Below, one piece after another: positions 49,907 through 63,157 of a DNA stretch of 64,000 nucleotides (within the stretch, counting starts at the first letter, position 1; the number at the start of each line of letters is the position of its first letter). The DNA lies in the NCBI GenBank assembly GCA_048013815.1, contig CM106585.1, positions 2,728,001 to 2,792,000 on the forward strand. The letters run 5' to 3'. The stretch is from Setoptus koraiensis (lineage: Eukaryota > Animalia > Arthropoda). The translations under genes were made by a program, and so were the position numbers. Below the pieces are notes generated by a model that did no database searches, was not told the origin of the DNA, and saw only the letters and a program-made list of their open reading frames with translations.

Positions 49907-51358
49907 GGGACTGGACAGGAATGGCTTTGCGCGGCCCATGAATCATCATTCATGGCTGCTGGCGGCGGATCAAGCGCCCGCGAATAGACGCGGCTAAAAA
50001 GAAGCGTTCGCTGGATTAATCTAGGCCCATCCATCATTCTTGGCTTCATCATCTGCGTTGTGTGTGATGTCTCATAATTTCTAACCGATCATCGGGGCGC
50101 CTCCGTGAGAGCGCCCACTCATCTCGCTGGGCCGCATCTGTCTCTCACAAGAGCGAGTCCATCTAGCGTGCCGGTGCTAGCTCACTTGTGGTGGGGCGCC
50201 ACTGGCGCCGCTAGTGCCAGGTCAATAATAAAAGTTGATGAGATGACGTAACGAGAAGAAGAAGAAGAAAAAGAAGTGAATAACGGTGAATAAAGTGATA
50301 GGTGGAAAAACACGCCGCCCCCACACTGGCCCCCCCAGCCGACTAACTACCACAACTAACCGCATTAAAATATATATATATATATATAGCCGCCTCAAAT
50401 ATCCATATTGTGACTCAAGTATCGGCGTCACTTTTCGGCTAAGCGATGCATCAGCGACGCCCACCTCTGCGCTAATGGGGCCCCTGATGAAAGAAGCAGG
50501 CGCGAATTTCGGGCCAAAGCTCAGCCATTAGACCTAATAAATATACGACGTGATAAATATAGACTGAGATGGCTGGTTCGTGTGCTGCGCCGGCAACGCC
50601 AGTTATCTCACAACTTGTCAGTGAACCAATTGGCCGGTCGCGAGGTGCTATCTGGGGCCCCCGTCTTGAGGATCGGTCCACTGGTCAGGGCCATTATTAC
50701 GCTGAAAATAAGTCAGTGACAGTGTCGCCAAGTTGCGACTAATTTACAATTTCCATATTGGCGCATATCGGCGCTGCCAGCGACTATCAGTGACGCGTAA
50801 TTATTGTTTTATCGCCGGCTGCCTTTTGCGGCCCGACCAACCGCTGAACAATCATCAGGTGTCAGGCTGTCATTTGAATTTTGAGCGACTCCAAGAGTCA
50901 AATTACGTCATAGAGCGCGCGGCAAATTTATTTTGCGACGAGCTAATAACGCCATTTTGAGCGTAAATGAATCAGTTGGGGCCCGGCTCGCCCATCAGGC
51001 CGCCGTATAACACTTAACTGGTGGCGGCGACGAAAGATTATTTAATAACTCAGCAAATACAATTCAATTTAATAATTCAATTTTCTTCCTTGTCTGTTCA
51101 TCCAATATCGCCCCATCCACTACCCATTATGTATGAATCGTTGTGTGCTGTACGCAATGAATAAATCTTGTGCAAATTACTGAAATTTGAACGATAGCAG
51201 GGCAGCGCAAATGCGACACACTGCTGGCATATTATTTGCATATTGAATTTGCTCAAGTCGCTGTGTGACCACTAGATAAACGTGCTAGATATTGCGCAAC
51301 ACGAGTGCACCGCCACGAGACGCCCCGAGACGCCCCGAGACGACAACGCAGCAGGCCA

Positions 51359-54300
51359 ATGGCAGCAGCCACCTCGATTGAGCCGGCCAAGGCGCACGAC
51401 AGCGGCGAGATTGATTCTAGCGACGAGGAACGTCAATTAGAGAAGCAAATCGATTGTGTGAAAAATGAGGCCGACGCCATGATGCTGGCGGATGATTGTT
51501 TGCAGAAAGCCGTCGAAAGCTGCTCAGAGAGCCGGCTCAAAGCCGGCAGCCTAGTCGACGACGATGGCCAATTGGCGGCCACCGGCGCAGCAGCAGGAGC
51601 AGCCATTCCTATGGACGCGGGTTCGCCACTGGGCAACGAAGATTCGAAGAGGCCAACCGAGGCCCGAATTGGAGAAGATAATGGCCATTCGTCGGACGGC
51701 ACAGATTGCTTGGACGACGACGACGACGACGACGATTTTAGCGGCGGCGGCGGCGCTCCTAATTTAGACCATTATCGGTCGAAATTAGCGCCAGTGACTG
51801 GTCACAAACTGACTGCTATCAAGCGCGAGCCGCTGACTCTGGGCGCCCACCTAGGCCAGCTCAGAGAATTCGAAGAGGAGCGGCCCGAGCGGGCCCCATT
51901 TATGCAGCGGCACAGGCACGGGCCAGAGCATCAGCCGATGCCCAACGGCGCTCAATCGGCGGCCGAGCTGACGCAAACAAACAACTTGGGAGCGGATTCG
52001 GACGACGGCTTGACGGAGGCACCGCTAGCTTGCGCGATGTCGCCCTCGTCCGACCGATCGTCGCCGATGATGCTGTCGGCGGGCCTCAAGCAGCGCGTCA
52101 ATCAGCCAGTCAACAACAGCCAGTCGGCCGAGCGGAAACAAGGCAACAACAAGAGACACAAGTCGCGACAATCCGCAATGCAGCTCGACCCGCAGCAACA
52201 CATGGGCGCCGGCCAGCCATCGCCCGAGTCCGCGGCCATGGTGTTTGCGGCAGCGGCTGCGGCCGCCGCAGCCAACATGGGCCACGCGCATTCGGCCAAC
52301 TTCCGGTCATACAAGAGCAACCAGTTACACAGTGGTCGCAATTACAATACAGAGGGCGCCAGTGGCAACATGTCGCCAAGTCCCACAGCACTGAACAACA
52401 GCAACCACAACAACAACAACAACAATATCGACACACAAAACATTCACAACAATCATCACGACAGCAATGCAATGATGCAATCATATATCACGCCAGCAGC
52501 AGCAGCAGCGGCACAACAGCACCATTTGTCCGGCATTCACAATCATCAGTCTGGCGGTAATCAATTGAGACCAATTGGCCACCACGCGGACAGTGCAGCA
52601 ACGATGCAATTCGGGAATGCACAGCAACAAGCTGACAACATCAATAATGTCAATAATAATAGTTCTGTTAACCAGGAGAACGCCAACAACAACAACGACG
52701 CCAATGTCAATCTGACAACAGGTAACAACAGACAACAGAAGAGCAACACATCGGGCTTGCCAATGACCGCCAGAAACAGCTGTCAGGGGGCGCCCGCGAT
52801 GCAGGTCGGGGCCGGTCAGCAGCAGCAGCCAGCGCAGAGGCAACTGGCTCAAAACGGGGTGGTGATGGTGCCCAGATTGAGCATCAGAGACCAGCAACAA
52901 ATGAACGACCAGGCGCTGAGGCGCTTCAAGTGCGAAGAATGCGGCAAGGCGTTCAAATTCAAGCATCACCTGAAGGAACACATCAGAATACATAGTGGCG
53001 AGAAGCCGTTCGCTTGCAAGAACTGTGGTAAGAGATTCTCTCATTCTGGCTCATATTCGTCGCATATGACGAGCAAAAAGTGTCTAATAATGAACCTGAA
53101 GGTTCGCAATAAAGCCCAAACAAACAACAACAACAACAACAATCATTCGTCGACGGCGATCACAGCGAACAACGCGCCAACAACAATCACGCCAACCGCA
53201 ACAGCGGCACCCGCAACAACGGCAACCACACAACCAACAACCACGAGCAGCGCCTCACCTGTTAACAACAATAAGTCACCCGCAACACGAACAACGGCGC
53301 ACAAGAATAACAACAGCAACAAAAAGACGCCAATGGCCTCGTCGAGGCAGTCGTCAAATTCAAATTTTTCAAATTCGCCAGCGTCGTCGGTGTCGTCGTC
53401 GGCCAACGCAAGACGCTGCAACAAGCAGCAGAACAGCGCCAACTCTAACGGTCGCAACAATCGCCACAACAATCACGCCATAAACCACAATCCAACCACA
53501 AACAACAACAACACCGGCCCGAGCGCCGCCACCAACGACACCAGCAACGGGCCGGCCGCGGCCCTGGCAAACTCAATGGGATCGAACGTCGCTCAATTGA
53601 ACAACGGCCAGCACCAGCCGGGCCAGTACCAGGCCGATGGTCAGTCGGTGAGCGCCCTGTTCGCGGCGGCGGCCGCCGCAGCCGCTGCCTCCTCGGACCC
53701 GTCGGGCGCGGGCGGACACCCGGCCGCTAGCGCGGCCCTGCAAACGGCGCTCGCAAACAAATTTCACCAGCAACAAGTGCAAAATCTGCTCTATCATCAG
53801 CAGCAACAGCAGGCGTCGTTCAATTCGAGCGGCGGCCCCTCAAACCCACTGCTGGAGCCCTACAAAAACAATCGTCTGTCCTATCACGGCTCGAGCCACT
53901 TGAGCCAGCCGGGCGCTTCGTTGCCGCTGAAGCAGCAAGAGCCCAACGGTCAATTTGACGACGCCAGCTCCGGCGATCACGCCAGAACCAGACAGTCCGC
54001 GCAGCATGCGGATAATCCCTTTGCGGCGGCCTCATTCATCAACACTCTGTCGTCGATTATGATGATGGCCAACAGCAACAACAGCAACAACAGCAACAAC
54101 AACAACAACGCTGCCAGCAAAGTTGCCGGCGACGCCAACGATGCCAGGCAGTCGGCTTGCGAACAACAAAACGCGCTCGGGCCCCAGCCGCCAAAGGACA
54201 ATCAGCAGTCAATAATTAATTATTTAAACTATTTATCTTCGTTCAGGAACTACATGCAGCAGCAGCAGCAGCAACCGTTAGTTGGCGGCGCCTCCATCAA

Positions 54301-56065
54301 CCAATCGGCGCCCGACAACTCGTCGATGAAAAAGATGACCGTCGACGTAACGGGCGTCGCAAACAGCAAAGATTCACAGCAGCAATCAGCATTCAACAAG
54401 AGCGGCAACATTTTGACAGTCGACGAAATGGAACCCGACGAGTCGGACGGCGGCGGCTCGTATCTGGGTTCGTCGCGGCCGTCCACGCCAATGTCCTACG
54501 AGCATCAGCTAAACCAGGTAAATGTCTACAGTCCAACATTCCAGGCTATGTCTATGCCGATGCTGTCCACACCACACAGCAACAACAGCAACAACAACAG
54601 CAACAACAACAAGGGCCTACAACAACAATTGCGACATCATTCAACAATGAATCACAATCAACAAAATCATGACGACGACATGACTACGCAAGAGGACGAC
54701 GACAACGATTGCTGGTCAATGGCCATGAACGATTACGTAATGAACAAATATCACAATTCAACAAATTCGCAACTGTCACATTTATTTAATAACGACAATC
54801 ACGACCTAATGACGGATCATCATCATCACAATGCTAGTCATCGCCATCACCACATGCAAAATCAGGCCAGCCTGTTGAGATCAAGCGCGTCTAGTCAACG
54901 TGCCAACCAACAATTGACGCTTGCCAATGGCGCTTGCATGGATGATATTATTAATAGTGATAATGGTAGTGACAATTATCATAATGGCCTATTATTACAT
55001 AACAACAACAATAATCCGTTAGCCACTGGCAATAGTCACTCGCTGCTTATGATGAATCATCATCATCATCAGCAGCAGCACACTAACGATCAAATGATTA
55101 ACGACTTGAATATGAGCCAAAATCATAATCACAATCACAGTCAAAACAACAAAAAGGTACGCGTCAGATCTGTGTTAGGCGAGGACACATTGAAGATATT
55201 GCGAGCTCAATATGAGATTAATCCACGACCAAAGAAGCACGATATTATTAAATTGTCGCATCAGGTAGATTATCCAGCCAGAGTTGTTCAAGTTTGGTTC
55301 CAGAATATGCGCGCCAGAGACAGACGCTTGGGCAGGCCGTTGCCCATATCGTCTTCGTTGGAGTCGTCGTCGTCGTCGTCGGCCGCTCAATTACGCCAAC
55401 AACAGCAACAACTTCACTGTCATATTATGAACAGCGGCAACATCAGCAGCAACAACAGCAGCAGCAAATGCAGATTGAATTACAACAACAGCAACAACAA
55501 TATCGGCGCTACGATAACGGCCGACAACAGAGAAACGCATCAACAGCAACACTTCAACAACAACAACAACTCAGCTCAACATCAGGCATCCATCTACGAA
55601 CACCACGACCACTACCAACAACAACAGCAACAACAGCATCACCCAAGGCGCCTAACCGACAGCTCCAGTCCGGTTTCTCAATCATCATTACTGAGCCAAG
55701 ATGATATAATAGTGCCAGCTAATAGTAGCTGCGCTGGTCAGTCGTCGATTAACGGTGTCAGTGGCAACAACATGTTAGACCAAGAGCACCACACAATGCA
55801 AACAACCAATGATATTTACACCACTAAACAACGGCAACATCCAAATCAAATGAACGCGGCCGCGAAACAATTCATGCAAGCAATATCATCTTATCAGCAA
55901 CTACACCAACAACATTCTTCGTCGGCCTCATCGAGTCCAAACACTTTCTCCCCAACGGACAATCCAAACGCCACCATTTTGACACAAACAATACAAACTA
56001 CCACTACTACCCCAATAACGGCATCTGATACATTTCAACCTCTCGATCTCAGCAGTAAGACATAA
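51359..56065 (+). CDS. zfh1: Zinc finger E-box-binding homeobox protein (zfh1/ZEB/Zag-1 family), single ORF, 1568 aa from the first ATG
   Basis: ZEB-diagnostic fingers [53 protein letters not shown] (52925-53083), a ZEB-type homeodomain [40 protein letters not shown] (~55151-55330), and CtBP motif PLDLS (56039-56053). The ORF track's GTG start at 51305 was replaced by ATG 51359. Further 5' or 3' exons cannot be excluded. Confidence 0.93.
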
Positions 56066-56447
56066 GGAACGTGCAAGAAATGCAAACAATGCCAACTGCA
56101 ACACACTCGACTATTTGCACACAACACATTTAAGCCACCCACGAGAAGCAGCATAATTTTTTAGCCTTTCATTATCACCATCTTCGTCGAATCATAATAT
56201 CACTATATTCAATATTATTATATAATATATACTTGTATATGTAATATTCACACAACACAAATCACGGGGCATTCACGGAATGATTCCAGGGATATTTCCA
56301 ACATCTTAACTTCCGCTCAGGATACAACCAGCCCTTATGGTGCTATTCTTTTGACCAATTCATTGATCGGACAACACATACACAAATCATGATAGCCTAG
56401 TACAGAAACATGACATACATCCGTGTACATTACTATACATTATTATA

Positions 56448-56453
56448 AATAAA
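56448..56453 (+). terminator. Candidate polyadenylation signal for zfh1
   Basis: AATAAA about 380 nt after the stop, in AT-rich UTR-like sequence. Confidence 0.4.
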
Positions 56454-57517
56454 AACATTATATATTGACAATAACACACAAATAGAAATACACATATTCT
56501 ATTCCATTTCGATAGTTATCCAATTATAAACAACGAAAGAGTTAATCATCATCACCTATTATATAATAAACTAAATTAAATCAAACATTTCGTCTAATTG
56601 ATGCTCTCATCATTGAAATATGATGAAATAGTGAAAAAATTATCGAGAAATGCGTCTCTTAGCATTGAAATAAAACGTCAATGCTACAATCGTCTGCATA
56701 TCGGGACCTCGGTGATGCCTGTATCGCGTCTGGGTCGTGGATCGGTGGCGTACGTGATACGATTCATTTGAAAAATCTCAATGATGCTAACAATAATAGC
56801 AAAATGCTAACCATATTTATGCGAGATAATAATAATGACTATGGTGGTGATGTAATAATAATGACATCGCTCGAGCACTTGCCTGGGGAAATCCGGCGTG
56901 CACATATTTTGTGATTCGCGAAATTTGTCCCGCGTTAGACCCTCTTCAACGTGGCCGAATCAACAAAACTAGCCTGCTCATTGTTGTCTTTGGTTCGTTT
57001 TCACGATTTAAACAATATTTGTTCCATAGTTAGCCGTCCCAATACATAATCGAACTCTCCCTCACTCCTGACAAGTATCCCTGCTCCATCGCCCCATGAT
57101 TTGCCTATTTCGTACAATGGACAATAGGGTCCAGGTAAATTATTAATCTGTGTAATGTAATAAATGAGTGCAAGTCGATACACGATATACTGCAATGATT
57201 TGAGGGTTGAATTGATGAAAATAAAGGAAAATCAACAATTATAGCCGATGTAAACAAATAACACGGCACGCAATGCGCAACTGGTATTCTGTGTTATTTT
57301 ACCACCATGTGTGTTGTCGCCACAATCCGGAGACAAAGCCAAAGAGCGCGCTAAACGTCAACATCAACAAACAACGAGTGCATTGAGGTGACCACAAGCA
57401 TCAAGAGTTGGCATCTCTGTATAAACACCAGCAAAGTATAACATTATTATCACATTATTTTTGTATAATTATTGCCATACCGTATTATTTATTTTCAATC
57501 AATTGATCAGCTACGAA

Positions 57518-59929
57518 ATGCCGTCGTCTCTGGGAAAAGCGGGCGAAATCAACACCATGGACGCGATAATTTCCTCGCAATCTTCGGGCGAGATGTTCGG
57601 ATGTGACGAGAATGGAAAGTAAGTTGGCCTCAGTCTGGTCGTTCACAATGACATTTCGTTATGACGACTCATAGATTATTATATTAAAACTCTCTTAACT
57701 CTAATTAATTCAATAATCAGATGTATGGTCAACGAGTCCGGTGTGCACGACCGAGGGAAGAACAGTAAATGTTGGATATTTGGTCGCGGTGAGGACCAGG
57801 ATGAGCCATCACAAGAGCCCAATAATGACGAACCTGTTGAAGATGCAGAAGAAAACTTCGATGACATGTTCGATGACGACGAAGATGACATTCCCAACCC
57901 CAGTCCAAATGGCAACCTCGACAAAGATTCCGACGAGGTCGATCCTGACGACATTCTCAATAGAGACCCTGATGAAGATGATGACGACCCTGATGATTTT
58001 CTCAACAAAGATCCTGTTGTTGAGGATGATGACGACGACGACTTTCCTGTAAAGAAACGAGGACTCAATTCAAAACAGGTTCGAGAACTATTAGATCGCG
58101 ACGATCCGCCACCAGAAATGGACGGAAACGACGACATAATAAATGACGATATAGAGTTGAATGAAGAGGACATGGATGTAGGAAAAATAAAAGCCGAATA
58201 CTTGGCAAAGATGGGCCTTGATGAAAATGGTGACTTACAAGCAACAAGCAGAGACAAACTAAACAAGAAAGATGTCGAAGAGTTACTCGATAGTATTCCC
58301 ACGCCTGTTATTCAAAAGCCTATTCAACCCGGCGCCACACCCGAAGAGGATAATGTTAGATTCTTGTGTTGGAACGAGACGGGTATTATTAGGGCCCAGT
58401 ATGGAGAAGATCAATGTATTGACGTTTTGTTTCACGACTCTGAGAGGCATTCCTCAATTAACTTTCAAAACGAACCCAATCATAGTTTTGCTTCAATGTC
58501 GGATGATTTGATTGTCATGGGCTCAAATGGAAAATACGGTACTGGTCCTTCGACTATTTTTGGTATTAATTTGCTCGAGAATGACCGCGATCAGAGAGAA
58601 TGGCACGTCAATTTACCTCACGTTGAACTCATTGAAGCATTGGCAGCAGGAACTGGTTTTGTGGCTGTTGTGACAGACAAGAGATATCTGAGACTATTAA
58701 CTCACGGAGGCATGCAATCATATGTAATAAGCTTACCTGGACAAGTTCTCTGTATGAATGCCCACGAGCAACAATTACTCATAATCTATCATAATGGTTG
58801 GGGACATCCAGACGACCAGAATTTGAGCATGAACACTTATCACATCGATCTATTCAATAACAAAGTCAGAAAATCCCTCAAGGATATACCCGTTGCGCTA
58901 AGTAAGCGATCGCCTCTCTCGTGGGCTGGTTTTTCTGATGAAGGTGCACCGGCGACAGCTGATTATCATGGAGTTGTTCGTATGTACAAGGATGACATTG
59001 CCGAATCATGGCATCCAGTTTTAGATTTCAGAGAGCTCAGTTCGAGCGCCTTAGATCATTACTTTGTTGTTGGTGTGAGCGAACTGCGAACAGGGGTTCG
59101 AGCTGTACAATGTTCCAACTCTCGCTACCCTGATAAGAGCCAAGATGTAGCTATTTTTTACCCGTTCACGGTACCACTATGTGACATGGACTGTCAGCGA
59201 GTTCAATTGGAAGAGGAACACGTTCGACTCAGGCTGGCCAGATCATCTTACGATCAGATAACTAGGCAAGGAGCCCACATGCGCCGAGTAGCAGTGCCTT
59301 ACATCGAGTCAAATGTAGAGGAACTGGCCGGAACCATACTCAAATTGTTCAGTATTTATTTGAATGATTCAAAAGAGGAGGCAGCCAAGAATCTGGTCTA
59401 TCTTATGCCAAAAGAATATGTTTACAAGTTGCCGGAGTATGCCTGGCATACGAAGCGTCGCTCATATTTCATAGAATCGCTGACGAAAGCAATTGAGGAG
59501 CGCGAGAGGAACGACGACGAGGAACGACAACAAAACATGGACAGCGATCACCGTCTAAACCAGCATGACATTGTAGCTGCCAGCGACCACGAAAGTGAGA
59601 AAGAATCTGAAGTTCTCAAGCCGAAACCTCTGGAACCAAAGAACCATCGCCTCGCATCGGAATTCGTGGGCACCTTGGGACCTGATGGACAATTGGTGAG
59701 AAAGAAGAGGAAGAATATCGACGATGACGATGACGACGACGACGACGACGATGGAAATGACAACAACGGCGAAAGTGACCAAGATGAGAAGTCAGTTGAT
59801 GAGAATGTCGACAATGCTGCCAACGGCGACAGTATGGACTCCGAGGTGCGTGTTGCGAAGAAATCGAAAACAATCTGTCGGCCTGTTACCGCCAACGGCA
59901 AATCGAATCCTTTCAAGAGAAAAAAATAG
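57518..59929 (+). CDS. WDHD1: WDHD1/And-1/Ctf4 replisome hub protein, join(57518..57618,57721..59929), 769 aa
   Basis: SepB domain motifs PIQPGATP..RFLCWNETGII..IDVLFHD..EWHVNLP..IEALAAGTGFVAVVT..LSWAGFSDEGAP..DHYFVVGV. The upstream exon was found by hand: ATG at 57518, donor AA|GTAAGT at 57619, acceptor ATCAG| at 57720. The phase-2 join keeps the frame (..GCDENGK|CMVNES..). Confidence 0.9.
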
Positions 59930-60376: not shown

Positions 60377-63157
60377 ATGGATAAATTGAACATATCCCTG
60401 GGAACTGTGCCCAATATCCAACCACAAATGGCTAATCCGGACCATTCGAGCCTACAGGCAAACAAGCAGACAATTTCTTCGTTATCTTCAAGTCAGCAAG
60501 CGAATTCATCTAAGGGCAACAGCACTAACAGTAACAACAAAAAGCTTCGTGGCGGCGGTCGTCGTGGTCGCTATCCCAGAGACCCATCCAATGGTGGCGC
60601 CGTTCATCGGTCATTTCAATCATCGAACACAGCCAACGAATCGTCGTCGTCCTCCAACAATAATAACACAAGCAACGCAATCCAATTTAACCCACGCAAT
60701 AGACACAAGAGAGGCTCCGCTCGTGGTGGCGCTGGCGGACTCGGTGGCGGCCCAGGCAGCTCGGGCAAATACAAGCAACGTCAATCTGCCGAACTATATT
60801 TAGACGAGCTCACATTGGCCGGCCTCGACATAGATCTGGCCGAGAGCATTGTTTCCAGTTCCACTGGGCCCACAACTTCGTCAACGTCTAACCAACGCCA
60901 TTCTGCTAGCAGAAAACTAAATCTGACACATTTGCTAAATTATAAATTCGACGGCAAGGATAGATCGCGTGCCAATTATCATCAAAACACCAGCGGGAGC
61001 CACCACCACCAATCACATCACAATTTGCCCAGACAATTTGTTGGCCACAGTGGTGGTCAGTACTACTATGGCAACAAGGACCGGCCTATGCGCTTTAATA
61101 AGCAACAATTTTTGCAGGCCAACTGTCAGTTTGTTGTATTGTCTGGCCACGATTATTCAGTTCACAGCGCCGATCCAGATTTGCCTGTTGATTGGGACAA
61201 AGTGGAGGAGGTTCGTTTCTTTCAGACCACAACAACCGAGACCACTTGTCCCATTTGTCTTCAGCCACCAATAGCGGCCAAAATAACTCGCTGTGGACAC
61301 ATCTATTGTTGGCCCTGTATATTGCACTATCTATCTCTTAGTGACGAAAATCATCGTCAATGTCCAATTTGTTTTGAGACAATCTACAAGACAGACCTGA
61401 GGAGCGTTGTGTCGCACACCTACAAAAATTATTCATTAGAGGACGAAATCACACTAAGGCTAATGGTGCGAACTAAAGGAAGCGTTGAAGTGTTCCCCTA
61501 CACGGATCCCAATCACAATGATGACCAGACCAACAGAGATTGCCATCATTCTGGTAGTGGTGGCACGACGCAAGATGAGGACAATTTTACACCACAACGC
61601 AATCTATTGATTGTAGATGGCCAAACTGTCATGGATAAAATAATAGCCAGAGAACAGGAGCAGCTTGAATTGATGAGGGACGCCGAAAGTGACGAGCCAG
61701 AAGTGTGTTTTGTTATTCAGGCCTTATCGTTGTTGTCTCGTCGGAAAGAAATCATGGAGAAAACAATTGAGTCAATGATTATCGCTGAACTTGCTGCTTT
61801 AACTTGCGACACAACAACAGCAACCACAACAAACAACGACCTAGCCAACGACTGTTGCAGCTATCCAAAGATGATGCCGTCGCCCGTCACAATGTCAACT
61901 TCGCCCTCTGATAACAACAACAAATTGAGCAGCCCTTGCGAACAAAAACGTGGCTTTAAAAATTATTTATTCTATCAATCAATGGATGGTCAACATATCT
62001 ATTTGAACGCTTTCAATACCAAGATGTTTTGTCACGAGTATCAGTGCATCGAAAATTGTCCCCCGCTTATTAAGGCAAAAATAATACAAATGGACTGGAT
62101 ATCTATGAACGAGGCTTGGCGGCGGCGTTACCGTTTCTTGGAACATTTACCATTGACGTGTGAGTTTCGCCTGGTCGAAGTAGAGCTGGCAAATCACCAG
62201 TATATCTCAGAGGAGACCTACAGACATTTTGAGGGTGAAATTATGAAACGAGAACTGGAACGTCAGAGAAGATTGAAAGAGGAGCGTAAACGCGAAAAAA
62301 TTATACGGGTGGAACAGCGAAGAAAAATCTATGGCATTCAACCGTCGTTGAAGATCAGCTTAGATAATAGTGAACAGTTTCCGTCTGTTATGGACGAACG
62401 ATTTCTTAGCTCTTACCCTCCACCGCCTTCAAATAGATCAACAGATGACATAATATCCAGTGATGATGATTATGAGAACGAAGAAGCACATGTTGTGTCA
62501 CAACAGACGCAGCAACAACCTGTGAGAGAAACGATGAATCAATCTCAATGTGAGCGGAATATTACTCCCGAGCCCAATGAGGAACCACCAACCTCGTCGT
62601 CGGTTTCGCTCAATCCTGGACCGTTGTCTTTTCGTGAAATTCAAATGCAAGAGGCCGCTGCTTTGGAGGCCCAGATGAAAAAGAAAAAGAAGTCCAAGGC
62701 CACCCAGGCTAAGACAGCTTGGGGCCACCAGTCATCGCTGGCGCAGAAGCTGGTAGACAACAAGAATCATGACAGCAACAATTTGCCATCTAGTTCCCAA
62801 TCTCAAGCGACTGTCGATAACAACAATGACCCTATATCTAGTGGCGAGCAACAATCTTCGTTCGCAAAATTATTGTTAGATGCTAAGTCAAGCCAGAAGC
62901 AATGGACCACCAGGGCAATCCCACAGCAATCATCAAGAGTGCCAGTAAATGATGGTTCAATTAATCAATCACAACCACCATTGCGTCCCTCAAACAAGGC
63001 ACGCATGTCGTCAAATCAGACTGATTATTCGGACAGTGATGATCAAGTGATGGCTACCAGGCCCCCAAATGAGTTTACATTAGCAGATTTTATTCAATTT
63101 AACGTCATAACAAGTAGCAAGAAGAGGGCTAAAAAAAGTTCCAAGAAGGCATCATAG
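60377..63157 (+). CDS. RNF10: RING finger protein 10 (E3 ubiquitin ligase), intronless, 926 aa
   Basis: FNKQQFLQANCQFVV..DPDLPVDW, RING CPICLQPPIAAKITRCGHIYCWPCILHYLSLSDENHRQCPICF, and FYQSMDGQHIYL and RRRYRFLEHLPLTCEF, all recognised as RNF10-family motifs. Confidence 0.93.
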   Translation: MDKLNISLGTVPNIQPQMANPDHSSLQANKQTISSLSSSQQANSSKGNSTNSNNKKLRGGGRRGRYPRDPSNGGAVHRSFQSSNTANESSSSSNNNNTSNAIQFNPRNRHKRGSARGGAGGLGGGPGSSGKYKQRQSAELYLDELTLAGLDIDLAESIVSSSTGPTTSSTSNQRHSASRKLNLTHLLNYKFDGKDRSRANYHQNTSGSHHHQSHHNLPRQFVGHSGGQYYYGNKDRPMRFNKQQFLQANCQFVVLSGHDYSVHSADPDLPVDWDKVEEVRFFQTTTTETTCPICLQPPIAAKITRCGHIYCWPCILHYLSLSDENHRQCPICFETIYKTDLRSVVSHTYKNYSLEDEITLRLMVRTKGSVEVFPYTDPNHNDDQTNRDCHHSGSGGTTQDEDNFTPQRNLLIVDGQTVMDKIIAREQEQLELMRDAESDEPEVCFVIQALSLLSRRKEIMEKTIESMIIAELAALTCDTTTATTTNNDLANDCCSYPKMMPSPVTMSTSPSDNNNKLSSPCEQKRGFKNYLFYQSMDGQHIYLNAFNTKMFCHEYQCIENCPPLIKAKIIQMDWISMNEAWRRRYRFLEHLPLTCEFRLVEVELANHQYISEETYRHFEGEIMKRELERQRRLKEERKREKIIRVEQRRKIYGIQPSLKISLDNSEQFPSVMDERFLSSYPPPPSNRSTDDIISSDDDYENEEAHVVSQQTQQQPVRETMNQSQCERNITPEPNEEPPTSSSVSLNPGPLSFREIQMQEAAALEAQMKKKKKSKATQAKTAWGHQSSLAQKLVDNKNHDSNNLPSSSQSQATVDNNNDPISSGEQQSSFAKLLLDAKSSQKQWTTRAIPQQSSRVPVNDGSINQSQPPLRPSNKARMSSNQTDYSDSDDQVMATRPPNEFTLADFIQFNVITSSKKRAKKSSKKAS

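What the first reader, a model, noticed from the sequence alone, without database searches (positions are those of the whole stretch)
52925..56065. zfh1/ZEB apparently reduced to two zinc fingers: no C-terminal finger cluster, and a splice donor right after PLDLS
Seen: only the last two fingers of the N-terminal cluster plus the homeodomain are present, and the ORF ends PLDLSSKT*. A consensus donor A|GTAAGA sits at 56055, but I found no C2H2-coding exon between there and WDHD1 (57518), and no finger-coding ORF upstream. Known: ZEB1/2 and Drosophila Zfh1 have a three-finger C-terminal cluster after the CtBP motifs, and ZEB high-affinity binding is bipartite, using both clusters. Inference: either a truncated monopartite ZEB with altered specificity, which might explain the dense clustered sites upstream, or a distant 3' exon lying beyond same-strand WDHD1 and RNF10. 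Both would be unusual.
Basis: partly seen in the sequence, partly recalled or inferred. Interest (0 to 1): 0.75.

Follow-up and report, generated by a model that had tools for sequence, protein, structure and literature searches.

The report
Mite ZEB/zfh1 gene split in two
In this tiny-genome gall-mite-type genome the developmental repressor zfh1/ZEB is encoded as two separate genes on different chromosomes, each keeping one DNA-binding finger pair and its own CtBP co-repressor docking motif, so the "missing" C-terminal fingers are relocated rather than lost.

Summary
One intronless ORF (window 51305-56065, +, 1586 codons) carries two ZEB N-cluster fingers and the ZEB-type homeodomain, and ends QPLDLSSKT*. 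No other real C2H2 finger lies in the 64 kb.

This gene really is truncated, but the C-terminal cluster is not lost. An own-genome search finds it on the other chromosome-scale contig (G000:C2:1966893-1967333, minus strand). It is a roughly 146-aa ORF: Met, DQPLDLSLK, a low-complexity linker, then the last two ZEB C-fingers. Those fingers are 90% identical to other mites and begin exactly at the ancestral last-exon boundary.

All other acariform orthologues hold both clusters and a single PLDLS in one protein.

Four related Logan contigs show the same truncated N-gene: stop 3-12 codons after PxDL(S/T), with WDHD1 abutting. A fifth shows the same C-mini-gene (dN 0.045, synonymous sites saturated). 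The split is therefore old and both halves are under selection.

The GTAAGA "donor" is not conserved and is no more frequent than chance. Independent DNA contigs rule out a local misjoin.

No RNA data exist, so independent transcription is inferred, not shown. I found no report of a split zfh1/ZEB gene.

The parts
51305..56065 (+). zfh1-N: intronless ORF of 1586 codons (first ATG at 51359). It is the N-terminal half of the split zfh1/ZEB gene.
   Evidence: 72% identity to the N-fingers and 47-51% to the homeodomain region of mite orthologues; it holds the only zfh1-type homeodomain in the genome.
52925..53080 (+). Two C2H2 fingers, equivalent to the last two fingers of the ZEB N-terminal cluster. 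They are preceded by SIRDQQQ..RRFKC, a relic of the lost preceding finger.
   Evidence: The relic motif is shared with relatives P0214 and L026. N-fingers 1-2 have no specific match anywhere in the genome.
55163..55327 (+). ZEB-type homeodomain
   Evidence: E 6.4e-12; best hits are mite zfh1/zag-1 proteins at 70-77% identity.
56039..56053 (+). PLDLS CtBP-docking motif, four codons before the stop codon
   Evidence: Orthologues carry exactly one such motif. Relatives keep PIDL(S/T) at the same C-terminal position.
56055..56060 (+). Donor-like GTAAGA (the codons AGT AAG). Most likely a chance match.
   Evidence: two occurrences in the ORF against 1.2 expected; not conserved in four relatives; the ancestral intron lies elsewhere.
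56063..56065 (+). TAA stop codon of zfh1-N
   Evidence: The position relative to PxDLS is conserved in relatives.
56448..56453 (+). AATAAA, the candidate polyadenylation signal of zfh1-N
   Evidence: Sequence only; no RNA data.
57518..59929 (+). WDHD1/Ctf4 gene (one short intron near its 5' end), the conserved neighbour of zfh1-N
   Evidence: Mcl1_mid. Relatives have WDHD1 next to zfh1-N but convergent. DNA contigs span 55447-59000 unbroken.
60377..63157 (+). RING-finger (RNF10-like) gene. Context only.

Best explanation
The single ancestral zfh1/ZEB gene has undergone fission in this mite lineage.

- **zfh1-N** (window 51305-56065) encodes the last two N-cluster fingers, the homeodomain and a C-terminal PLDLS. 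Its transcript most likely ends at the AATAAA about 385 nt downstream of the stop.
- **zfh1-C** (G000:C2:1966893-1967333, minus strand, between a hexokinase gene and Rpp40) encodes a roughly 146-aa protein. It starts at one of two ATGs just upstream of DQPLDLSLK and ends with the last two C-cluster fingers.
- Lost altogether: N-fingers 1-2, C-finger 1 and the ~250-aa linker.

Each product therefore keeps one DNA-binding 'hand' plus its own CtBP dock. The retained fingers are the pair in each cluster that matters for CACCT(G) binding in vertebrate ZEB.

The simplest mechanism is two separately expressed, monopartite, CtBP-recruiting E-box repressors. Because CtBP is an oligomer, they could also be held together on bipartite sites.

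**Shown:** the genomic arrangement, its conservation in relatives, purifying selection on the C-half, and the presence of CtBP.
**Inferred:** independent transcription, DNA specificity, CtBP binding, and the route of the split.
For: **The C-cluster is on the other contig**
- the second-best own-genome hit to the finger pair (72% identity, E 1.5e-19) lies on the other contig.
- it is an open frame with Met, DQPLDLSLK, a linker and two fingers ending HRYSYCKP.
- it is 90% identical over 62 aa to C-fingers 2-3 of Oppia, Medioppia, Dinothrombium and a millipede. No other zfh1 relic lies in 50 kb around it or in window+20 kb.
- the genome has only one zfh1-type homeodomain. C-finger 1 and N-fingers 1-2 have no specific match.

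**The ancestral state is one gene**
- eleven orthologues from mites and other arthropods. The nine complete ones have both clusters and exactly one (D/E)(Q/E)PLDLS motif in one protein; the two cut-off ORFs (P0162, P0154) are uninformative at their 3' ends.
- the conserved last intron lies at EHSGQ|RPH. The C2 homology begins exactly at RPHKC.

**The split is shared with relatives and under selection**
- Logan contig L020 from a relative carries the same mini-gene (Met..PVDLSLK..linker..RPHKC fingers, no C-finger 1, no homeodomain in the 693 nt upstream).
- the K in HLKEH is shared only by these two among 182 sequences.
- dN 0.045, synonymous sites saturated, third-position identity 45%.
- four related contigs carry the same truncated N-gene, with a stop 3-12 codons after PIDL(S/T), WDHD1 abutting, and no further finger in 7.3 kb downstream in L026.

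**Assembly and partner**
- independent DNA contigs span from the ORF end into WDHD1.
- CtBP is present in two tandem copies (E 7e-174 to solved CtBP1).

**Literature**
- PMC8304685: two fingers in each ZEB cluster are crucial for DNA binding, and both clusters are needed for bipartite binding.
Against: - No RNA data exist for this organism. None of the 16 runs found is on record as RNA, and the contigs laid behave as DNA. So neither the 3' end of zfh1-N nor the 5' end, or even the expression, of zfh1-C is shown.
- Placement of the two loci on different chromosomes rests on the assembly's scaffolding, which I could not check. Only the window locus was verified by independent contigs.
- If this is the published Hi-C assembly, about 6% of the sequence was left unplaced and is not in G000.
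- Only one relative of the C-half was found. Its contig is short (1757 nt) and its organism is unknown.
- The homeodomain tree does not itself place this genome with the five relatives. That link rests on shared architecture, the SIRDQQQ..RRFKC relic and VDYPARV.
- Whether the second PLDLS is homologous or convergent is unresolved.
Confidence: 0.78

Rival explanations
1. Trans-splicing. The two loci are transcribed separately, and the pre-mRNAs are joined to rebuild a two-handed ZEB protein.
For: - A GTAAGA lies one base after PLDLS.
- A phase-compatible AG (..cctag|AT) exists five codons after the C2 PLDLS (read). A join there would be in frame and would keep a single PLDLS.
Against: - About one such phase-compatible AG is expected by chance within 20 codons.
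- The donor is not conserved. L026 has no GT between the motif and the stop, and L022 and L025 have weak GT contexts, while the residues T-M/I-V-S after the motif are kept through different codons.
- The C-half keeps its own Met and PxDLSLK in two species whose synonymous sites are saturated. That would not be expected of intronic sequence.
- GTAAGA frequency in the ORF equals chance.
Confidence: 0.04
2. Ordinary cis gene with a distant 3' exon, or an assembly or scaffolding error. In reality the C2 exon lies downstream of the window gene.
For: - In the published assembly that I take this genome to be, chromosome placement is by Hi-C scaffolding of PacBio CLR contigs (PMC11920263).
- I could not lay reads on the C2 locus.
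Against: - Independent short-read contigs from two studies are colinear with the window from 55447 to 59000.
- No finger lies in the 28 kb downstream.
- There are no Ns in either region.
- In relatives WDHD1 is convergent and ends 100-190 nt after the zfh1-N stop, followed by SAC3 and MMS19 with no finger exon.
- The C2 ORF has no acceptor at the ancestral exon boundary, and has its own start.
Confidence: 0.04
3. Only zfh1-N is functional. It is a truly monopartite ZEB, and the C2 finger ORF is a decaying relic or is not expressed.
For: - There is no expression evidence for zfh1-C.
- It has lost C-finger 1, and its linker is low-complexity.
Against: - It is 90% identical to distant orthologues.
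- dN 0.045 with saturated synonymous sites against a relative that has the same architecture.
- A 198-codon open frame is kept in AT-rich sequence.
- PxDLSLK is conserved upstream of the fingers in both species.
Confidence: 0.08

Closest known systems
Zfh1 (Drosophila), ZAG-1 (C. elegans), ZEB1/ZEB2 (vertebrates): two-handed zinc-finger/homeodomain repressors
   Same: - The same signature fingers ([26 protein letters not shown] in the N cluster; [27 protein letters not shown] in the C cluster).
- The same divergent homeodomain.
- The same PLDLS CtBP motif between the homeodomain and the C cluster.
- Best hits are mite zfh1/zag-1.
   Different: - Here the N cluster with homeodomain and the C cluster are on separate genes on different chromosome-scale contigs.
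- PLDLS is present on both.
- Each cluster is reduced to two fingers.
- The linker and C-finger 1 are gone.
Intact zfh1 of other acariform mites (Halotydeus destructor P0122, Oppia nitens P0124, Dermatophagoides P0136/P0137, Dinothrombium P0140)
   Same: - 70-77% identity in the homeodomain, about 72% in the N-fingers and 90% in C-fingers 2-3.
- The large central exon is conserved, and the last exon starts at RPH(K/Q)C.
   Different: - They are one gene of 5 exons (Halotydeus, 5.8 kb) with 3-4 N-fingers, 3 C-fingers and one PLDLS.
- There is no synteny with WDHD1, hexokinase or Rpp40.
Gene fission by duplication and complementary degeneration (my own recollection of the general literature, for example the monkey-king family in Drosophila)
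   Same: - Two daughter genes together cover the ancestral domains.
- They overlap in a short shared segment (here the CtBP motif).
   Different: - The route is not established here. The C-half's conserved block begins exactly at an ancestral exon boundary, which fits equally well a break or duplication within the last intron followed by de novo gain of a PxDLS motif.

Membership tests
ZEB/Zfh1/ZAG-1 family | N-terminal C2H2 cluster with the ZEB signature (..[12 protein letters not shown]..; ..[18 protein letters not shown]) | tested here: met
   Two fingers, about 72% identical to mite orthologues including flanks. Fingers 1-2 of the cluster are absent.
ZEB/Zfh1/ZAG-1 family | Central ZEB-type homeodomain | tested here: met
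   top hits are zfh1/zag-1/ZEB proteins; unique in the genome.
ZEB/Zfh1/ZAG-1 family | CtBP-interaction motif (PLDLS) C-terminal to the homeodomain | tested here: met
   Motif presence only; binding was not tested. CtBP itself is present in the genome.
ZEB/Zfh1/ZAG-1 family | C-terminal C2H2 cluster on the same polypeptide (two-handed architecture) | tested here: not met
   - The window ORF stops 3 codons after PLDLS.
- No finger lies in 64 kb + 20 kb.
- The cluster's last two fingers are encoded at G000:C2:1966893-1967333.
- Hence this is an orthologue by descent, but not a canonical family architecture.
ZEB/Zfh1/ZAG-1 family | Binding to CACCT(G)/E-box half-sites and transcriptional repression | not testable with these tools
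   Needs EMSA, SELEX or reporter assays. The retained fingers are near-identical to orthologues.
Split (fissioned) gene pair | Both halves exist as separate, independently transcribed genes | tested here: inconclusive
   - Separate loci, own start and stop codons, conservation in relatives and purifying selection are shown.
- Transcription is not shown, because no RNA runs exist.

The most novel reading that the evidence does not exclude
The two halves are not just independent one-handed repressors. They are re-assembled non-covalently: each docks through its own PxDLS motif on a subunit of the CtBP dimer or tetramer, so that CtBP acts as the linker of a two-handed ZEB complex on bipartite CACCT(G) sites. 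This would explain why both halves have kept a CtBP motif since the split. It would also make the mite a natural test of whether covalent linkage of the two ZEB finger clusters is needed.
Probability: 0.2. Interest if true: 0.8.

Novelty: new variant of a known kind. Interest (0 to 1): 0.68.

Why it matters
ZEB/Zfh1 proteins are textbook 'two-handed' repressors, central to epithelial-mesenchymal transition, neurogenesis and muscle and gonad development. Their high-affinity binding is attributed to two finger clusters on one chain.

A lineage that has kept both hands on separate genes for a long time offers three things:
- It is a natural separation-of-function experiment on the two-handed model.
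- It shows which parts are dispensable: N-fingers 1-2, C-finger 1 and the linker.
- It points to CtBP recruitment as the function that both halves could not lose.

It is also a clean example of fission of a deeply conserved developmental regulator during extreme genome streamlining. Finally, it is a warning for annotation: homology-based pipelines will call zfh1 'truncated' and leave the C-half as an anonymous small zinc-finger gene.

Tried and rejected
- **Protein word search with the finger region.** Swamped by poly-zinc-finger proteins and useless. Replaced by the homeodomain region.
- **RNA evidence.** The look-up of sequencing runs on the 3' UTR found 16 runs, none on record as RNA. The four laid were Logan contigs that read straight through the WDHD1 intron, so they are DNA.
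- **Exact-protein look-ups.** P0136, P0213 and this genome's own 146-aa C-half were not on record.
- **Synteny with Halotydeus.** Its neighbours are a FA hydroxylase and a cyclophilin, so this says nothing about how the split arose.
- **The upstream minus-strand 'gene' on L020.** Low-complexity, and it gave no synteny with Rpp40.
- **Homeodomain tree.** The five relatives form a 100/100 clade, but this genome falls in an unresolved polytomy. The tree is not used as evidence of sisterhood.
- **'VS' after PIDLSTM as a read-through GTAAGT donor.** Considered, then rejected on the DNA: GTC TCT in L022, GTT CCG in L025, and no GT at all in L026.
- **Literature.** No paper holds both 'gene fission' and 'zfh1'. 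The run accession of L020 is in no paper.
- **Joined model.** The pieces were searched apart by reference.
Full report
**1. What is in the window**

- The ORF listing shows one uninterrupted ORF at 51305-56065 on the + strand. It has 1586 codons; the first ATG is at 51359.
- Pfam finds two C2H2 fingers (aa 541-563 and 569-592; window 52925-53080) and one homeodomain (aa 1287-1341; 55163-55327).
- The protein ends [11 protein letters not shown]. The codons are ..CTC AGC AGT AAG ACA TAA, so a GTAAGA lies at 56055, and an AATAAA follows at 56448.
- A six-frame C2H2 regex over the whole 64 kb returns only these two genuine fingers.
- The downstream same-strand genes are WDHD1/Ctf4 (Mcl1_mid, E 1.6e-66) and a RING protein.

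**2. Where the C-terminal fingers are**

The window is G000:C1:2728001-2792000 of a 48.76-Mb genome in two contigs.

- I searched that genome with the window's own finger pair. In ZEB proteins this pair is paralogous to C-fingers 2-3.
- After the self-hit, one outstanding match appears: 72% identity, E 1.5e-19, at G000:C2:1966947-1967105 (minus). Everything else is at or below 55% identity.
- The locus (L002) is a 198-codon open frame containing only two ATGs, both just upstream of DQPLDLSLK.
- Then come about 60 residues of T/N-rich linker, then [35 protein letters not shown] and a stop.
- tblastn of eight orthologues shows this block is 90% identical over 62 aa to C-fingers 2-3 of Oppia, Medioppia, Dinothrombium and a millipede.
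- No other zfh1-like relic lies in 50 kb around it or in the window plus 20 kb downstream.
- The locus lies between a hexokinase gene (same strand, about 700 nt downstream) and Rpp40 (divergent, about 3 kb upstream).
- The genome has only one zfh1-type homeodomain, the window's; the next best is 39% identical.
- C-finger 1 and N-fingers 1-2 of orthologues have no specific match anywhere.

**3. The ancestral state**

- A homeodomain-region search returned intact orthologues from Halotydeus, Oppia, Oppiella, Medioppia, Dermatophagoides, Dinothrombium and other arthropods.
- All the complete proteins have 3-4 N-fingers, the homeodomain, exactly one (D/E)(Q/E)PLDLS(L/V/I/F)(K/R) motif and three C-fingers ending HRYSYCKPYRE in one protein.
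- The Halotydeus gene (L021) has five exons. The large exon ends ..KYEHSGQ and the last exon begins RPH.
- Many representative ORFs from other Acari start at MTSKKC and end ..KYEHSG followed by junk, which shows the same intron.
- This matches the vertebrate layout, in which one large exon encodes the last N-finger, the homeodomain and the CtBP sites (PMC8304685).
- The conserved block on C2 starts exactly at RPHKC, so it corresponds to the ancestral terminal exon.
- The ancestral intron is therefore after C-finger 1.

**4. The split is shared with relatives and is under selection**

*The N-half.* The exhaustive representative search with the homeodomain and tail contains five clusters (P0203, P0210, P0211, P0213, P0214) that form a 100/100 clade.

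- They show the same architecture, complete in P0214: SIRDQQQ..RRFKC, two fingers, the homeodomain with VDYP(A/P)RV, then PIDL(S/T) and a stop after 3-12 codons.
- Their contigs (L022/L023, L024, L025, L026, from five different SRA runs, L022 and L023 sharing one protein) show WDHD1 convergent and ending 100-190 nt after the stop.
- On the 10.6-kb L026 there is no further finger in the 7.3 kb downstream, which holds WDHD1, SAC3 and MMS19.
- After the motif the DNA reads ACG AGA GAT TAG (L026, no GT), ATG GTC TCT (L022), ATG GTT CCG (L025) and ATA GTA AGC (L024).
- So the residues T-M/I-V-S are kept through different codons, and a donor is not conserved.
- In the window ORF, GTAAGA occurs twice against 1.2 expected.

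*The C-half.* P0357 (Logan contig L020, 1757 nt) is an ATG-initiated 275-aa ORF.

- It has NNPVDLSLKQ, a long low-complexity linker, then LRPHKC..KHKHHLKEH.. fingers. It has no C-finger 1, and no homeodomain coding in the 693 nt upstream.
- The K in HLKEH is shared only by this protein and C2 among 182 ZEB C-termini.
- Over 56 finger codons, dN is 0.045 while synonymous sites are saturated. Third-position identity is 45% and GC3 is 0.34 against 0.80.
- Both species have the split architecture, so this divergence is post-split. The mini-gene has been under strong purifying selection.
- The six QPLDLS codons of the window and C2 copies differ at five codons, so that duplication, or convergence, is also old.

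**5. Assembly**

- The 3' UTR words are held completely by five runs. Two of these (X1/X2) appear to be one data set filed twice and two (X3/X4) may be the source of this assembly, so at most three independent sources; none is on record as RNA.
- Laid on 54000-59000, a 2469-nt contig (X1/X2) covers 55766-58234, and a 4265-nt contig from another study (X5) covers 55447-59000. They differ at one or two positions and read through the WDHD1 intron.
- They are therefore DNA, and they exclude a local misjoin between the ORF end and WDHD1.
- The genome's two contigs and the 24,533,333-base length of C2 match the published Setoptus koraiensis assembly: two chromosomes, N50 24.53 Mb, built from PacBio CLR, Illumina and Hi-C with no RNA-seq (PMC11920263).
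- I take this identification as probable, not proven. The paper gives 47 Mb anchored, against 48.76 Mb here.
- Chromosome placement thus rests on Hi-C scaffolding that I could not re-check, and unplaced scaffolds are not in G000.

**6. How it most likely works**

- Each half has one finger pair and one PxDLS motif.
- The ZEB2 review states that in both clusters two fingers are crucial for high-affinity binding, that both clusters are needed for binding to paired CACCT(G) boxes, and that PLDLS sites recruit CtBP.
- From my own recollection of the primary literature, the crucial fingers are the last two of each cluster. Those are exactly the ones kept here.
- CtBP is present in two tandem copies on C2 (about 22.118 and 22.123 Mb), with E 7e-174 to solved CtBP1.
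- The best-supported reading is two separately encoded, CtBP-recruiting, one-handed E-box repressors.
- A more novel possibility is that oligomeric CtBP bridges them into a non-covalent two-handed complex. This is my inference and was not tested.
- How the split arose is open. One route is duplication with complementary loss, with the PLDLS segment as the retained overlap. The other is a break or duplication in the last intron, followed by recruitment of new 5' coding sequence and de novo gain of PxDLS. The exact coincidence with the exon boundary favours the second; the nine-residue match DQPLDLSLK to the ancestral consensus favours the first.

**7. Rivals**

- *Trans-splicing.* A phase-compatible AG exists five codons after the C2 PLDLS (read), but about one is expected by chance. 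The donor is not conserved, and the C-half's own Met and PxDLSLK are conserved.
- *A distant cis exon or misplacement.* This is contradicted.
- *A dead C-half.* This is contradicted.
- None can be excluded finally without RNA.

**8. Limits and procedure notes**

- Literature searches found no report of a split zfh1/ZEB gene. Absence from this library is not proof of novelty.

Noticed in passing
G000:C2:22116410-22124676 (L028, L029): CtBP is present as two tandem copies about 4.7 kb apart, each in a 543-codon open frame. That is unusual for a genome of about 6,000 genes, and it is relevant if two ZEB halves each dock on CtBP.
   Followed up: partly
window 51305-52924: zfh1-N has a roughly 540-residue Q/N/A-rich extension in front of the fingers, and large low-complexity inserts elsewhere. 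It is 1586 aa against 413 aa for relative P0214. Whether translation really starts at 51359 or at a Met near aa 521 or 533 is unknown.
   Followed up: no
window 57518-59929 versus L022, L023, L024 and L026: The zfh1-N/WDHD1 adjacency is conserved, but WDHD1 is on the same strand here and convergent in four relatives. That points to a local inversion in one lineage.
   Followed up: partly
L002:1950-2300 (minus strand); L020:40-690: Candidate 5'-UTR intron of zfh1-C. In this genome there are GTGAGT donors about 200-330 nt upstream and a pyrimidine-rich ..caccag acceptor about 70 nt before the first ATG. In the relative there is a CCG|GTAAGT near position 46 and a ..ttcgcag acceptor 6 nt before the ATG. 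Sequence only.
   Followed up: no
P0129 (Oppiella nova annotation): The public model repeats the last C-finger segment twice, with intron-like text between the copies. It looks like an annotation or assembly artefact rather than biology.
   Followed up: no
window 55336-55669: Logan contig depth rises to tens of thousands, with many spurious joints and loose ends over the CAA/CAG (poly-Q/N) repeats of the ORF. This is a repeat artefact, not structural variation.
   Followed up: partly
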